Of a stretch of 48,746 bases of DNA, positions 29,822 to 42,205 are shown in pieces. Within the stretch, counting starts at the first letter, position 1. Each line of letters opens with the position of its first letter. The DNA lies in NCBI GenBank assembly GCA_013115145.1, contig JAAPAO010000239.1, forward strand, positions 1 through 48,746. The letters run 5' to 3'. Source of the DNA: Perkinsus chesapeaki ATCC PRA-425. Its lineage: Eukaryota > Protista > Perkinsozoa. The position numbers and the translations under genes are program-made. The notes under the pieces were generated by a model. The model saw only the letters and a program-made list of their open reading frames with translations, made no database searches and was not told the origin of the DNA.

Positions 29822-30624
29822 ATGGATCCACGATTATCGACTAACCTGCTTAACCCTCAAGGATTCTCCAAGTCCCGAACCAAGATATTTTCATGTCGTC
29901 TATTCTGCAGTAGACTCCTGACCGTAGCACTGTTATTGCGTCCATTCCTGGTATCAGCGCAAGCGTTGGAGCTGGATATCGCTCATGGATTGATCTCTGG
30001 TTATGGCTACAGTATCTACGGTCGATTAAGCCCTGGTGAAAGTGACTTGTGGGCGGTAATTGACACCGGTTCGCCTTATACTTCTGTTATGTCGAAGGAA
30101 TGGTACGAGAAAGCGCTTGGCCCAGGATCATGCGAACGATCCAGCTTTGGCTGTTATCATTGCCCTGAACCGTGCCAACGAAGTCCGACTATATCCATCA
30201 CTTACAGGGATAAGACGGTTTCCTCGGTTTTCCTTCACCGAGACACAGTCAAACTCGGTAAGACAGTTATTCCCGACTTAGAGTTCGGCGTGCAATTCGA
30301 CCAGAAGCCCCCTCCCCAGGAAAAAACGCCCGCCAACATAGTTGGTCTCTCGTTGGGTGGTAGCCGAGGCTATGATCCACTCCTAAATCAACTGGTGCAA
30401 AAGTCTCTGATCCATTCTCAAACTTTTGCTGTGTATATTTTGCCAGACGTGAAGAAAGGGTGGAGGTCGGGGAAACTATTGATAGGTGGCGGCAACCCCA
30501 GTCTCTATAAGCACCCATTGCGCTATGTTGAACTGGGCAGCAAAGATGAGTACATGGTGAAATTGAAGAGCATGAATATTGGCAGCGAGCTTACTCTTAT
30601 CGGTATCAACGAAGACTTACTACT
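29822..30624 (+). pseudogene. Pepsin-like (A1) aspartyl protease, N-terminal part, interrupted by transposon
   Basis: Signal-like hydrophobic stretch, AVIDTGS first catalytic motif, GKLLIGG; homology stops at ...INEDLLL. Confidence 0.9.
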
Positions 30625-31043
30625 GGGCGTAACAGGTTTCGCCAAACAGAATTACGCCAAATAGTGACCAAGCGGAATTCATTCGCCAAATAGCACAAAA
30701 AATGGCGAAACCCATGCAAAGGACCGCGTTTGATCAACCTGCCGATTTCCCCCTGGAAACATGTTAGTCCCAAAACTTGGGCAATATCTAAGACTAGTTG
30801 GCAAGGCGGTGTCACTTGGTCAAACGGCATAGCAACACATACTCTGCCAAGTTTTATATTATTGATGATTTCACCTATTTGGCAGAAACTAGTCAGATCG
30901 AGGTTACGCCGAGTCGCGAAAACTGGCAGATTACAGCTAAAGAAGCTGGCGGAGCGAAATGTTTCATGAATGCTAAATACTTTAATCATGCGCTTTCATT
31001 ATTGCTTTTGTGTTGTGTGTCTACTAGTAGTTTTTAGCTGGGG

Positions 31044-31154
31044 GGAGTGACAAGTTATGCTGCAATGGAAGGTGTGACAAGTCATTCTGCAACTGAAGGT
31101 GTGGCAAGCGATCCTGCAATGGAAGGTGTGGCAAGTGATGCTGCAGTGGAAGGT
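31044..31154 (+). repeat. 27-bp degenerate tandem repeat, about 4 copies
   Basis: ctgcaatggaaggtgtggcaagtgat-type units; reads xAMEGVASD in one + frame. Confidence 0.8.
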
Positions 31155-32295
31155 TGAACGGCGTGAGCATGTGAGGTAATAATCGGGCAATAAATAATAA
31201 AGGTATATCGTTTTCTCCCGAACTTCATATATATTCGAAAATATACTAATATATCGAGTTCTGATATATACCAATTATAGTTTCAAATATTTTATAAATA
31301 TCGTATTAGAGTATAACTACAGCTGCACGCACAGCTACAACTAATCGCTTTTCGTGGTATATCATCGCTAGATAGTCTTAATTCCTAGTCTACAGCAGCA
31401 TATATAGGGCCACGTAACTTACCTTCTATAGCTCATTACTATTCTCGTAGATTCGATATGTAATTAGACAACGGCCGGAATGTCTTGAATGCCGTCTTGA
31501 AACCGTCTTGGGATTATAATGTATTATATATTTTATTTTTTATATATTATTTTATATATTACTAGTGTATATATTATTTTCTCTCGAACTTCTAAATGAA
31601 GTATGGCCCATACGGTATGGGGTGTTGTTGTTAGACATTTTATGTGATTTACATACAACTCGGTAAGACTCCATGCCAGTGCCACAACCCATGCTCCTGG
31701 TGTTATATACCATCGCTATGGAGCTGGTTGTCGCTATGGTGCCAGGGTGGAGCGGTGTTGTTTATGCGTAAATTCTGGTCTAATATTAAGTGAAATTCTG
31801 GTAAATTCTAATATGCAAAATTAAGTGGAAGGGATTCCTCTGGCACCTCAATATGGGCCTGCTACGGCCTGCGCAGAAGAATTTTCTCATATTGCGGATC
31901 AGGGTTCCTGCTATACTAACTCGGCGTGTAACGCGCCGCCGCGGCGCGTTAGTATAGAGCGCGTCAAACGCGCTCCGGGCACGTGGAATGGACACCTTCG
32001 CTGAAGATTCTTCGGTGGAGATGTCAGAGATTTTACAGCTTAGTTGAGATTCTTTCCTAGGGGAATCCCCTAAGGGGATACTCCCAAAGTCAAGTCTGAT
32101 GCATCATTAGTTGCGATTTCACTGTTGTGATCCAAAACTTTTGGACATTAGCGCTATCCCCGCCCACTTGTTAGCGGGACACTAGCCTTCGGCCAACTAG
32201 GTCCGCAGTTTTCACTCGTATTGTGTTGGCCATATCATGGATGTGAGTAGTCTTATTTCATCAAGTTGAGATTATCGGTGTTGTTTCCTCCTCTC

Positions 32296-38914: not shown

Positions 38915-39058
38915 GATACGCCGAGTAACCTTGTGCTCGGCACATGCTTCGGTGACTGACACATTGCGGCTGCTTGATCTATTTGTGCTGCATCGAACTC
39001 TCCCATGCCATTAATTTTATGTAGGGCCCGTGCGGGCGTCATGTCTTATGTATTTTTG

Positions 39059-39915
39059 GTGCTGCACTGAAGGCTCTTATGTGGAGCCTGTGCGCGATAT
39101 CCTTTATCTGCTTTATGTGCTGCACTGAAGGCTCTTATGTGAAGCCCGTGCGCAATATCCTTTATCTGCTCTATGTGCTGCACTGAAGGCTCTTATGTGG
39201 AGCCCGTACGCGGNNNNNNNNNNNNNNNNNNNNNNNNNNNNNNNNNNNNNNNNNNNNNNNNNNNNNNNNNNNNNNNNNNNNNNNNNNNNNNNNNNNNNNN
39301 NNNNNNNNNNTGTGAAGCCCGTGCGCAATATCCTTTATCTGCTCTATGTGCTGCACTGAAGGCTCTTATGTGGAGCCCGTACGCGCACACTTTATCTGCT
39401 TTATGTGCTGCACTGAAGGCTCTNNNNNNNNNNNNNNNNNNNNNNNNNNNNNNNNNNNNNNNNNNNNNNNNNNNNNNNNNNNNNNNNNNNNNNNNNNNNN
39501 NNNNNNNNNNNNNNNNNNNNNCTTATGTGGAGCCCGTGCGCGATATCCTTTATCTGCTCTATGTGCTGCACTGAAGGCTCTTATGTGGAGCCCGTGCGCG
39601 ATATCCTTTATCTGCTCTATGTGCTGCACTGAAGGCTCTTATGTGGAGCCCGTACGCGGCACACTTTATCTGCTTTATGTGCTGCACTGAAGGCTCTTAT
39701 GTGAAGCCCGTGCGCAATATCCTTTATCTGCTTTATGTGCTGCACTGGAGGCTCTTATGTGAAGCCCGTGCGCGATATCCTTTATCTGCTTTATGTGCTG
39801 CACTGAAGGCTCTTATGTGGAGCCCGTGCGCGATATCCTTTATCTGCTTTATGTGCTGCACTGAAGGCTCTTATGTGGAGCCCGTACGCGGCACACTTTA
39901 TCTGCTCTATGTGCT
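39059..39915. repeat. ~55-58-bp tandem array (two N gaps)
   Basis: tatcctttatctgct(t/c)tatgtgctgcactgaaggctcttatgtg(g/a)agcccgtgcgc(g/a)a, period 58 (39061, 39119) with shorter cacactttatc variants; gaps at 39214-39310 and 39424-39520. Confidence 0.95.
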
Positions 39916-41836
39916 CTTTTCGACGGATTCTCTGATGGATGTTCTGTGAAACGTTATGCCTTCCCAATCTGCGGAGTCGGGATTCCTGATTTGCTCTCCT
40001 GTTCTGCCATTTTCCACTTAGAGCAACAGTACAAGCGGCAAGTAGTGTTTAAAGTTTCCACTAAAGAGGTAGTTTATGTAGCAGTGTTAGTCCGTATCTG
40101 TAGCTTCTATGGTCGTTTCAAACGCCTGAAAGTGTGATACGGGCTGCTGGTGCACCGGCGTCTTCTAAGATCCCCAATCTTTATTTCAGGTTCAACAATC
40201 CGTGTATCCGCAATGGCTGGCAGTGGCTGTTACTCTAGGGTTCACATTAATCATTCTGGTAATGCTTTGGTGACTAATACGACCTCGGGTTTCACAGTTT
40301 TCAGGCCTGCACACCCAAGCAAATATCTGACGGATCTGAGCAGTGCTTTGTAGGTTACTTATTCTGCGTTCTTCACACTGCTACTTTAATTACCGTCTCA
40401 AATCCACACTTGTCTTGTGTTAATCGGAACATTACATTTGGCACCCCGCTGCGGAGTCTCCGCATGAGCACCATACCGGATCTTATTATATTATGTTGAA
40501 AGTCTTGAGTATCTCGATTTCTTGGCCTTGAATGCTATGCTACGAGTAAGCACTGTGGTAGTACTAATTAGGGATCTCCCTCGGTTATCATCCTACATAA
40601 CACAACAGGGCCGTGAGACTGAAGTCACTCAGAAGATTGCATTCGAACGGCTGCTTGGACAGAATGATAAACTTAACTTGTGTTTGTTGTGTTAATTTTA
40701 TAGTTCAATTCAAAGTTGCTGTGACAACAACGTGGTTATGAGTTCCAACTACGCGCTCGTATCGTAACGTATCACGGATAAACTATACAGCAAACGACAT
40801 CGTGAACACAACATAATGGAGAAACATGGAAACTACAATTGCTTGATACGTGCTGGAAACTCAACCCTCAAAATCCTAGAATGAGATCAAGTGTACTTAC
40901 ACAAACTTTTGCAAACATTCAACTATCTTCATATGTAGAGACTACAACCCGCGCATCAAACTGTGCAACTCAAACTAAGCAACGACTCGTCCGGGTTCCA
41001 AAACGTTTCTTCTTGTAGAGTCCAAAAGTGTTCTTTATGTTGGGGCATATTACATCTCGTTTCCCGTGAAACTAAAAGCATTTCCAATATTCACACTCCA
41101 CACGTTCAGGTCGCTAATTGCAAGAGTTTTTACAACTCAACGCATCCGAGGGTACAGAAAATCAGCAATCAGAAAGTAACCGAAATTAGTCAAACTAGGC
41201 TGAGCAAACAATTTGTTTGTCTGTTTGTTTGAAACTAACTTAGTTGCAAGTCACGCCGGCTCTATGCCACGTATGTCACAATACAAAAATCCCTAAGGAT
41301 CTCCAGTCTCCGAGGTTGCGGAATTCACGTTCATTCGCTGGATACCACCGTGCATAAGACGCCTCGCTCAAATGGCGAAATACAGCTGGTAACACGTATA
41401 ATCTAGGAATTAGGCAAAAGCTGCATAGAGAACCGATTACAAAAGAAAAAACGCTCAGTACACACCCATTTGGCATGTTCTGATAGGAAACATGTACAGC
41501 GGAAAAAATGATGATATCCGTGTCTGATTGAGGAAATACGAGGATAACACCTACTCTCGCCAAAAAATCCGGAATTACCCGTTCTAGAGAAGAAATCAGC
41601 AGCCACTGCTAGGCAAAACCACGTTTACAAAACCGCTGTCAGCGTACGGGCGAGCGATTTTGGCCAGGTAGAAAAGCGACCGGACCAAAAATTACGGTAG
41701 ACTCGGAGCGGTAGCAGCCTGTAAGAGGTGAAATCCAGTGAGAATGGGTTGGAACAAAGGTTTTACCGTACATTTTATTGAGCACTAGATTAGGGAAATC
41801 AGCAACCTTGGCGAGTCGGCGAAACCTGGTGCCCCG

Positions 41837-42205
41837 TTACTACTAGACACTGGGACGAATTCTATATATGTCCCAGTGAAGCCAGGTCTCCTTTCCAGTA
41901 TACTTGCCAAGATTTCGCAGCTAGCTAAGCTTACTTTCAAATGGAATGCCATTGCTAAAGCTTGGCAGTTATCATGCAAGCTTCGTTCTGCTTTACCTGT
42001 ATTGTCATTTGAGCTCGGCGTAGGCAATATCCCTCTGAAGATGAGCCATCTCAACTATGTTCGTCAAGCTCTCGGTGATATATGCTTCCTCATTTTCCGA
42101 GAGACTAAGGCTAATTACTGGATCCTGCCTGGTGAAGCTTTCATCGGCAACTATGTAGAATTTCATCGTAAAGAAGGTCGGGTAGGAATTGCCGAACTCG
42201 GTTAG
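41837..42205 (+). pseudogene. Pepsin-like aspartyl protease, C-terminal part
   Basis: LLLDTGTNSIYVP (second catalytic DTG)...LPVLSFELG...CFLIF...YWILPGEAFIGNYVEFHRKEGRVGIAELG*. Confidence 0.9.

What the first reader, a model, noticed from the sequence alone, without database searches (positions are those of the whole stretch)
30617..41844. Giant 11.2-kb Mutator-like element with degenerate ends and two genes, precisely delimited
Seen: perfect 8-bp target duplication TTACTACT (or 9 bp with one mismatch). The ends share only an 11-bp core CAGGTTTCGCC. The left end has repeated CGCCAAA motifs (30640-30690), an internal inverted ggtttcgcca/tggcgaaacc pair, and ggttacgccgagtcgcgaa (~30902), which resembles the right end. 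Inside are two long intronless ORFs, each followed by a tandem array. Established: MULEs make roughly 9-bp TSDs; Arabidopsis VANDALs are large MULEs with degenerate TIRs, accessory genes and internal tandem repeats. Inference: an undescribed, probably recently active alveolate MULE lineage.
Basis: partly seen in the sequence, partly recalled or inferred. Interest (0 to 1): 0.85.

Follow-up and report, generated by a model that had tools for sequence, protein, structure and literature searches.

The report
Intact Mutator transposon in Perkinsus
An 11.2-kb, complete Mutator-type jumping gene has landed inside an aspartyl protease gene of the clam parasite Perkinsus chesapeaki; its cutting enzyme carries extra chromatin-reader-like and RING-like zinc fingers, which makes it an unusual variant of a well-known transposon kind rather than a new kind.

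Summary
A perfect 8-bp duplication, TTACTACT (9 bp with one mismatch), flanks an 18-nt imperfect inverted repeat.

The boundaries are independently confirmed. The element splits a pepsin-type aspartyl protease gene, and the two halves abut in the Pfam profile and in reading frame. All three assembly gaps lie inside tandem arrays, not in ORFs.

ORF2 (1187 aa) is an apparently intact MULE transposase. It has D896/D962/E1092, a CxxH motif, a FLYWCH-like finger, an N-terminal PHD finger and a C4C4 RING-like module. ORF1 (630 aa) is an orphan. Its only detected relative is a frameshifted copy in another sample.

The host is Perkinsus chesapeaki. The transposase groups with other Perkinsus MULEs, next to FLYWCH-MULE (Phantom/MuDRx-like) transposases.

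The element is single-copy by assembly depth. No empty site or transcript was seen. One run shows a second junction that starts at the predicted left end.

Verdict: a real, precisely delimited autonomous MULE and a new variant of a known kind. Recent activity is plausible but not shown. The scan has already noted PHD/RING-bearing and Pif1-fused MULEs elsewhere in this genome.

The parts
29822..30624 (+). 5' part of the interrupted host gene (pepsin-type aspartyl protease, first DTG motif included). It ends in the left TSD copy.
   Evidence: Pfam Asp PF00026, profile positions 15-193 of 315, E 7.5e-15. The public 280-aa gene model reads on into the transposon end.
30617..30624 (.). Left target-site duplication, TTACTACT (9 bp if 30616 is included, with one mismatch).
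30625..30643 (+). Left terminal inverted repeat, GGGCGTAACAGGTTTCGCC.
   Evidence: (I8: 18 nt, 83% complementary). In run X5 a second genomic junction begins at 30624.
30635..30920 (.). Left subterminal region with repeated end motifs: GGTTTCGCC at 30635 (+) and 30704 (-), GGTTACGCCGAGTCGCGAA at 30902 (+; 16 of 19 identical to the reverse complement of the right end, by eye), and CGCCAAA three times at 30638-30690. These are putative transposase-binding sites.
   Evidence: The binding function is inferred.
31047..31154 (+). 27-bp x 4 tandem array carrying the core motif CTGCA(N1-2)TG(N0-1)AAGG, which it shares with the 58-bp array.
32296..34188 (+). ORF1, 630 aa from the first ATG. It is an orphan accessory gene of unknown fold.
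   Evidence: No Pfam, PDB or Atlas match. AF2 mean pLDDT is 30. The only detected relative is 62-66% identical in amino acids, with dN 0.27 and dS saturated.
34212..34943 (+). 134-bp tandem array directly after the ORF1 stop codon. It contains assembly gap 34671-34766.
35351..38914 (+). ORF2, a 1187-aa transposase. PHD finger aa 17-67 (nt 35399-35551); C4C4 RING-like aa 367-414 (nt 36449-36592); G/D/S-rich region within aa 471-760; FLYWCH-like finger aa 736-768 (nt 37556-37654); DDE core with D896, D962, C985xxH988 and E1092 (nt 38030-38629).
39017..39915 (+). 58-bp tandem array about 100 nt after the ORF2 stop codon. It contains gaps 39214-39310 and 39424-39521 and carries the same core motif as the 27-bp array, always on the + strand.
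39916..41817 (.). 3' non-coding region with no ORF of 100 aa or more. One-mismatch terminal motif at 41612 (-).
41818..41836 (-). Right terminal inverted repeat; its reverse complement reads (C)GGGGCACCAGGTTTCGCC.
41837..41844 (.). Right target-site duplication, TTACTACT.
41837..42205 (+). 3' part of the interrupted aspartyl protease gene. It starts in the right TSD copy, and the second DTG motif follows immediately.
   Evidence: Pfam Asp profile positions 202-314 of 315, E 2.9e-11. The frame is continuous with the 5' part.

Best explanation
Window 30625-41835/6 is one complete, autonomous cut-and-paste DNA transposon of the Mutator (MULE) superfamily in Perkinsus chesapeaki. It inserted into the coding sequence of a pepsin-type aspartyl protease gene, just upstream of that gene's second catalytic DTG motif, and duplicated 8-9 bp of target.

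Shown:
- The boundaries, from the TSD, the TIR and the host-ORF continuity.
- A 1187-aa transposase with an intact DDE/CxxH core of the FLYWCH-MULE type.
- A bona fide PHD finger at the N-terminus of that transposase.
- A second conserved ORF lying inside the boundaries.
- Tandem arrays after each ORF.

Inferred mechanism:
- The FLYWCH-like finger binds the GGTTTCGCC-type terminal and subterminal repeats.
- The DDE core excises and reintegrates the element with staggered cuts 8-9 bp apart, as in other MULEs.
- The PHD finger and the C4C4 RING-like module tether or regulate the transposase on chromatin.
- ORF1 is a lineage-specific accessory protein of unknown role.

The intact ORFs, the perfect TSD and the undecayed host half-ORFs suggest a young insertion.
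For: Boundaries:
- The TSD and TIR are present as described.
- The host ORF is continuous across the junction. The two halves cover Asp profile positions 15-193 and 202-314.
- Contigs from read sets of two samples (either may be the assembly's source) cover the left junction at the same depth as the flank, 107.6 against 107.6 and 41.5 against 41.5. The ORF2 region is at 108 and 41.5.
- In X5 a 13.6-kb contig with a different left flank joins the element at 30624, one base outside the predicted end.

Transposase:
- MULE PF10551 at 30.4 bits against a 27.6 cut-off, and PHD at 27.8-33.8 bits against 24.
- 3522 homologues at E<=1e-3.
- Invariant D/D/E and CxxH columns are kept, with spacings of 66 and 130 aa. 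These match the ranges reported for MULEs (PMC13359780).
- 42 of the 64 nearest full-length homologues carry FLYWCH plus MULE, and their profile hits the FLYWCH1 structure 2rpr.
- The Perkinsus sequences form one group with SH-aLRT 99.
- The PHD and RING-like N-termini recur in P. olseni P0029 and P. chesapeaki P0014.

Selection on both ORFs: dN is 0.06-0.30 with dS saturated.
Against: - Single copy by depth in sample S1.
- No full-length second copy was recovered anywhere. The P. olseni relatives are fragments or relics.
- No empty-site allele was seen, and no RNA run was listed as holding ORF1.
- The right junction was not checked with reads.
- ORF1 is not shown to be linked to a transposase in any other genome. 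On L003 no transposase homologue lies within 1.9 kb downstream of the ORF1 homologue.
- The RING-like and FLYWCH-like modules are below Pfam thresholds in this protein itself.
- The TIR is short and imperfect.
Confidence: 0.88

Rival explanations
1. ORF1 is not a transposon gene. It is a captured host gene or fragment (Pack-MULE-style acquisition), and the relative on L003 is the host gene or pseudogene in another Perkinsus-like genome.
For: - MULEs are known for acquiring host gene fragments (PMC6446971).
- On L003 the ORF1 homologue has no transposase homologue within 1 kb upstream or 1.9 kb downstream.
- ORF1 matches no family known from transposons.
Against: - The word-based search found no other homologue among proteins of 0.55-1.75 times its length, apart from the window's own model and one Logan contig. 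That search is insensitive, so this is weak evidence.
- The L003 copy is frameshifted, as decaying transposon copies are.
- ORF1 is a full-length 630-aa ORF on the same strand as the transposase, and it has its own downstream tandem array, the same layout as ORF2.
Confidence: 0.25
2. The 11.2 kb is a nested composite. A smaller MULE (ORF2 with its own ends) sits together with an unrelated inserted or adjacent element (the ORF1 block), and the outer ends belong to only one of them.
For: - The element is unusually long.
- It has two gene-plus-array modules.
- A 20-nt, 80% inverted pair (31769-31788 and 35276-35295) brackets ORF1 and its array.
Against: - That pair is AT-rich, and I saw no flanking target duplication by eye.
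- No other internal TIR is stronger than chance-level pairs.
- The terminal motif GGTTTCGCC occurs only near the outer ends.
- The 27-bp array upstream of ORF1 and the 58-bp array downstream of ORF2 share a motif in the same orientation, which ties the two halves together.
- Depth is uniform across flank, ORF1 and ORF2.
Confidence: 0.07
3. The element is real but immobile: a single, fixed insertion that no longer transposes, so 'recently active' is wrong.
For: - Single copy by depth, with no empty-site branch in the S1 contigs. No run was listed as holding ORF1 RNA.
- The relatives in P. olseni are relics.
- The TIRs are short and imperfect.
Against: - The 1187-aa ORF has all catalytic residues.
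- The TSD is perfect, and the host half-ORFs carry no stop codon.
- Sample S2 has a second junction with the left end at about half depth, which the S1 contigs do not show.
Confidence: 0.35
4. Assembly artefact: the element was joined to the protease gene by scaffolding across repeats.
For: Three N gaps lie within the element, and the gap lengths are out of register with the arrays.
Against: - The gaps are confined to the tandem arrays.
- A 6990-nt contig from read sets of sample S1 spans 28800-34342 without a break.
- The TSD plus the in-frame continuity of the host gene could not arise from misassembly.
Confidence: 0.02

Closest known systems
Phantom / MuDRx-type MULEs (FLYWCH-bearing Mutator elements of invertebrates, Trichomonas and Phytophthora; Marquez & Pritham 2010, as summarised in PMC6446971)
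   Same: - A FLYWCH-type finger lies directly upstream of the DDE core, and most of the nearest homologues are FLYWCH plus MULE proteins of about 460 aa.
- The TSD is 8-10 bp.
- TIRs can be as short as 18 bp.
- There are one or two ORFs.
- A minisatellite follows the transposase ORF (Table 1 of PMC6446971).
   Different: - The transposase is 2-2.5 times longer, because of a roughly 735-aa N-terminal extension with a PHD finger and a C4C4 RING-like module.
- The FLYWCH-like finger is too divergent for Pfam (C2-HC ligands instead of the W..C..C..HxH pattern).
- The host is a perkinsozoan alveolate.
- The Perkinsus sequences form their own group in the tree.
- No named Phantom reference sequence could be included in that tree.
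Rehavkus (MULE-related group known only from Repbase; insects and annelids)
   Same: [quoted passage not shown]
- An internal minisatellite.
- A 9-bp TSD.
- Large size, for example Rehavkus-1_TC at 9.5 kb with tandem arrays (PMC6446971, PMC10218199).
   Different: - Rehavkus is used as an outgroup to MULEs, whereas this core scores as a regular MULE and sits among FLYWCH-MULE proteins.
- Here the minisatellite ends 1.9 kb before the 3' TIR.
- Rehavkus has one ORF; this element has two.
- Phylogenetic membership could not be tested, because no Rehavkus sequences were available.
Arabidopsis VANDAL MULEs
   Same: Large size, weak termini, accessory ORFs beside the transposase, and internal tandem repeats.
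   Different: - This is an analogy only.
- VANDAL21-type elements lack TIRs and encode VANA, VANB and VANC (PMC6446971).
- ORF1 matches no known family, so a VANC-like anti-silencing role is speculation.
Other Perkinsus MULE genes (P. olseni KAF4682164 'RING-type domain-containing protein', P. chesapeaki KAF4650668 'PHD-type', P. marinus XP_002787218; 21 MULE-domain proteins counted in P. marinus, PMC3558436)
   Same: They fall in the same group in the tree. They share the PHD / RING-like / MULE order of domains.
   Different: They are only 25-41% identical. They are annotated as hypothetical proteins, without element boundaries. None carries an ORF1 homologue nearby.

Membership tests
Mutator-like elements (MULE superfamily) | DDE transposase with the MULE catalytic domain, including the C/DxxH motif after the second D | tested here: met
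   PF10551 at 30.4-31.9 bits against a 27.6 cut-off. D896, D962, C985xxH988 and E1092 fall in columns that are invariant or nearly so across 64 homologues, with spacings of 66 and 130 aa.
Mutator-like elements (MULE superfamily) | Target-site duplication of 8-11 bp | tested here: met
   A perfect 8-bp TTACTACT, or 9 bp with one mismatch. Host ORF continuity confirms the site.
Mutator-like elements (MULE superfamily) | Terminal inverted repeats (length variable; absent in some families) | tested here: met
   18 nt, 83% complementary, plus subterminal copies of the motif.
Mutator-like elements (MULE superfamily) | Mobility or multiple copies sharing the same ends | tested here: inconclusive
   Single copy by depth in S1. 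One additional left-end junction appears in X5 at about half depth. No full second copy and no empty site were seen.
Phantom / MuDRx (FLYWCH-MULE) | FLYWCH (WRKY-GCM1-type) zinc finger upstream of the DDE core | tested here: inconclusive
   42 of 64 homologues hit PF04500 and their profile hits PDB 2rpr. The window protein aligns there with C..C..H..C ligands, but it does not itself reach any Pfam FLYWCH score.
Phantom / MuDRx (FLYWCH-MULE) | Phylogenetic grouping with named Phantom or MuDRx reference transposases | not testable with these tools
The tree used only unnamed database homologues.
Rehavkus | PHD finger in the transposase, and a minisatellite before the 3' TIR | tested here: inconclusive
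   A PHD finger is present, though N-terminal. A 58-bp array follows the ORF but ends 1.9 kb before the TIR.
Rehavkus | Transposase clusters with Rehavkus references, outside canonical MULEs | not testable with these tools
   No Rehavkus sequence was accessible. Indirectly, the core scores as a regular Pfam MULE and its nearest relatives are FLYWCH-MULE proteins.
VANDAL-type MULEs | VANA transposase with VANB/VANC accessory proteins and no TIRs | not tested
   ORF1 has no detectable family, and TIRs are present here. No VANB or VANC sequences were compared.
RING E3 ligase domain (ORF2 aa 367-414) | Eight zinc ligands in cross-brace spacing, recognised by a RING profile | tested here: inconclusive
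   The pattern C-x2-C...C-x-C-x4-C-x2-C...C-x2-C is conserved with P. olseni P0029. The best Pfam match, zf-RING_4, scores only 11.1 bits against a 27 cut-off, and 15.8 bits in P0029.

The most novel reading that the evidence does not exclude
The PHD finger and C4C4 RING-like module fused to the transposase are functional, and the orphan ORF1 works with them. Together they would form a chromatin-directed system: the transposase reads a histone mark to choose genic targets, here a coding exon, and uses ubiquitin-ligase activity or ORF1 to counter host silencing. That would be a mechanism not described for MULEs, in a Perkinsus-specific clade that has kept this layout across species.
Probability: 0.12. 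Interest if true: 0.7.

Novelty: new variant of a known kind. Interest (0 to 1): 0.4.

Why it matters
This is the first fully delimited autonomous MULE I could find described for Perkinsozoa. The broad MULE survey I read lists no alveolate hosts (PMC6446971). An earlier paper only counted MULE-domain proteins in P. marinus (PMC3558436).

What it offers:
- A reference element (ends, TSD, two genes) for annotating Perkinsus repeats.
- A clean natural gene knock-out of an aspartyl protease in the sequenced culture.
- A candidate active transposon for building genetic tools in Perkinsus, a group being developed as an experimental system.
- A testable case of chromatin-associated domains on a DDE transposase, through the PHD and RING-like extension shared across Perkinsus MULEs.

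It does not change what is known about how Mutator elements work.

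Tried and rejected
- Word-based protein search with the transposase core found nothing. The exhaustive HMMER search was needed.
- Exact look-up of ORF2 in public gene calls gave no record.
- ORF1 had no Pfam, PDB or Atlas match. AlphaFold on a 4-row alignment gave pLDDT 30, so no fold search was run.
- A homologue search with the 5' half of the protease returned only the window's own truncated gene model, so a comparative empty site from orthologues could not be obtained.
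- Related loci from P. olseni (L001, L004, L005, L006) and a Logan sample (L002, L003) share only coding similarity. None has the terminal motif, an ORF1-ORF2 pair or tandem arrays.
- A metagenome scan with the 19-nt left end gave two chance hits with no extended similarity.
- No RNA run was listed as holding ORF1, so expression could not be assessed.
- The nested-element idea around ORF1 (inverted pair I3) was rejected for lack of a TSD.
- dN/dS ratios could not be computed because dS is saturated in every comparison.
- The careful tree search did not finish. The quick tree (SH-aLRT only) is what is reported.

Full report
**1. Observation**

- TTACTACT occurs at 30617-30624 and again at 41837-41844. 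With one more base the repeat is 9 bp with one mismatch.
- Just inside lie imperfect inverted repeats: arms 30626-30643 and 41818-41835, 18 nt and 83% complementary.
- All three exact copies of GGTTTCGCC in the 48.7-kb window lie within about 90 nt of the two ends (30635 +, 30704 -, 41818 -). One-mismatch copies are at 30902 (+) and 41612 (-). The count with a mismatch allowed is not above chance. Only the placement of the exact copies is informative.
- CGCCAAA-type repeats cluster at 30638-30690.
- Two long ORFs lie on the + strand. Each is followed by a tandem array: 134 bp at 34212-34943 and 58 bp at 39017-39915.

**2. Assembly gaps**

The three N runs all sit inside those two arrays, with the same repeat units on both sides. 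No ORF is affected. The stated gap lengths do not keep the arrays in register for gap 1, are within 1 nt for gap 2, and are unclear for gap 3. Array copy numbers and the exact element length are therefore unknown. As assembled the element is 11,211-11,212 nt, including 291 N.

**3. Independent proof of the boundaries**

- The ORF that runs into the left end (29822 onward) is a eukaryotic aspartyl protease. Pfam Asp covers profile positions 15-193 of 315.
- The translation that starts in the right TSD copy (41837-42202) covers positions 202-314.
- With the element and one TSD copy set aside, the reading frame is continuous, and the second catalytic DTG motif follows the junction directly.
- The element is therefore a simple insertion into a coding exon, and the two halves of the host gene have no further defects.
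- The public gene model for the protease is a 280-aa protein that reads from the host gene into the transposon end.

**4. Read-set evidence (Logan contigs, so presence only)**

- In sample S1 one 6990-nt contig spans 28800-34342 at the same depth as other long contigs (107.6 in X1, 41.5 in X3).
- A 4183-nt contig leaves the 134-bp array at 34575. By its length it should span the ORF2 region. Its depth is the same as the flank (108 and 41.5).
- The element is thus single-copy there. No empty-site branch is seen, so the insertion appears fixed in that culture.
- In sample S2 (X5) the graph branches exactly at 30624-30653. A 13.6-kb contig at about half depth (55 against 114) carries a different sequence to the left of 30624.
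- This is a second junction of the same left end, starting one base outside the predicted boundary. It supports the boundary and hints at another, diverged or partial, copy in that sample. I could not follow it further.
- The right junction was not examined.
- No RNA run was listed as holding ORF1.

**5. Host**

ORF1's public gene model is 'hypothetical protein FOL47_004171 [Perkinsus chesapeaki]', on a contig of exactly the window's length. Notes of this scan name the same genome.

**6. The transposase (ORF2, 1187 aa)**

- Pfam gives a PHD finger at aa 17-67 and the MULE domain at aa 912-991, both above their curated cut-offs.
- An exhaustive HMMER search with aa 740-1187 found 3522 homologues at E<=1e-3.
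- The closest are fragmentary gene models of P. olseni (71%, 64%, 51%, 41% identity) and P. chesapeaki (41%), plus a Logan contig (88% over the last 137 aa).
- Next come about 460-aa proteins at roughly 30% identity.
- In an alignment of 64 homologues, D896, D962 and E1092 and the C985xxH988 motif fall in columns that are invariant or nearly so. The spacings of 66 and 130 aa are in the range reported for MULE families (PMC13359780).
- 42 of the 64 homologues carry Pfam FLYWCH upstream of MULE, and their profile matches the solved FLYWCH1 finger 2rpr.
- The window protein aligns there (aa 736-768) with a C..C..H..C pattern, like the other Perkinsus members. It does not itself score for FLYWCH.
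- Residues 367-414 have an eight-cysteine pattern shared with P. olseni P0029 at 24% identity. The best Pfam match is the CNOT4-type zf-RING_4, far below threshold. I call this module 'RING-like' only.
- Residues 471-760 are rich in G, D and S.

**7. Phylogeny**

In a quick maximum-likelihood tree, all seven Perkinsus sequences (P. chesapeaki, P. olseni, P. marinus) form one group with SH-aLRT 99. The tree uses SH-aLRT only, a midpoint root and unnamed database homologues. The group has two deep subgroups, each holding more than one species.

PHD and/or RING-like N-termini occur in both subgroups. The long N-terminal extension therefore looks ancestral to this Perkinsus clade.

**8. ORF1 (630 aa from the first ATG at 32296)**

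- It has no Pfam, PDB or Atlas relative, and AlphaFold could not fold it (pLDDT 30).
- Its only detected relative is on a 4.85-kb Logan contig (L003). That copy is 62-66% identical in amino acids along the whole length and has a frameshift near aa 239.
- dN is 0.27 with dS saturated, so the gene has evolved under constraint.
- L003 has no transposase homologue within 1.9 kb downstream. Linkage of ORF1 to the transposon therefore rests on this copy alone, and gene capture remains a live alternative.
- The public gene model removes 16 codons as an intron. The relative keeps them in frame.

**9. Other internal features**

- A 27-bp x 4 array at 31047-31154 and the 58-bp array share the core CTGCA(N1-2)TG(N0-1)AAGG.
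- The pattern matches 14 times in the window, all on the + strand and all in these two arrays.
- This ties the region upstream of ORF1 to the region downstream of ORF2 and argues against a nested composite.
- So do the lack of any convincing internal TIR/TSD pair and the uniform depth.

**10. Comparison with known families**

- Dupeyron et al. (PMC6446971) list Phantom with TSD 8-10 bp, TIR 18-613 bp or none, one or two ORFs, FLYWCH or SWIM or no finger, and a minisatellite after the transposase ORF.
- They list MuDRx-Phytophthora with a 9-bp TSD and FLYWCH.
- They list Rehavkus with a 9-bp TSD, a PHD finger and a minisatellite, in insects and annelids.
- Rehavkus-1_TC is 9.5 kb with tandem arrays (PMC10218199).
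- The present element combines traits of these groups. It has a FLYWCH-MULE-type core, PHD and RING-like fingers, a second ORF and minisatellites.
- That survey lists no alveolate host. Swart et al. only counted 21 MULE-domain proteins in P. marinus (PMC3558436).
- Repbase and Dfam could not be consulted, so 'uncatalogued' is unproven.
- This scan has separately noted another PHD/RING MULE and Pif1-MULE fusions in the same genome.

**11. Verdict**

This is a real, precisely delimited, apparently intact autonomous MULE that disrupts an aspartyl protease gene of Perkinsus chesapeaki. It is a new variant of a known kind.

Recent insertion is likely: the ORFs, the TSD and the host half-ORFs are all intact. 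Present mobility is unproven. Interest is moderate, about 0.4.

Noticed in passing
window 29625-29700: A short stretch about 120-200 nt upstream of the protease start codon has 2.6-5 times the contig depth of its surroundings in all three DNA runs. It joins to several different flanks, so it looks like a small dispersed repeat.
   Followed up: no
window 30624-30653 (run X5 only): A 13.6-kb contig at about half depth carries a different sequence (ending ...CGCAGGATGA) immediately left of the element's first bases. That is a second junction of the left end in sample S2. It is not seen in the S1 contigs, and the element interior is not at correspondingly higher depth.
   Followed up: partly
window 32296-34188 (public model FOL47_004171): The annotated 614-aa model removes 16 codons (aa 474-489) as an intron. 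The only homologue keeps this stretch in frame, so the intron call is doubtful.
   Followed up: partly
window 29822-30664: The public 280-aa aspartyl protease model is a truncated product that reads 13 codons into the transposon end. The 3' third of the gene (41837-42205) is left unannotated or modelled separately.
   Followed up: yes
window 32238-32250: ATGGATGTGAGT lies 58 nt upstream of the ORF1 ATG. It looks like a start codon followed by a GT splice donor, so there may be a short upstream exon for ORF1. This was not tested.
   Followed up: no
L005:10729-11403 (P. olseni JABANP010000617): A relic of a related transposase (56-62% identical) with an internal deletion between aa 932 and 1077. 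No terminal motif is nearby.
   Followed up: partly
L006:9728-14479 (P. olseni JABANP010000481): A 40%-identical partial MULE lies 2.3 kb from a gene with a PIF/Harbinger-type DDE_Tnp_4 domain, which suggests a transposon-rich patch.
   Followed up: no
window 117-1616, 7524-8780, 12956-13849, 17576-18781, 23346-24542, 25610-26977, 43536-44252: Seven further ORFs of 238-499 aa have no Pfam family. Other notes of this scan describe some of them as a paralogous secreted family.
   Followed up: no
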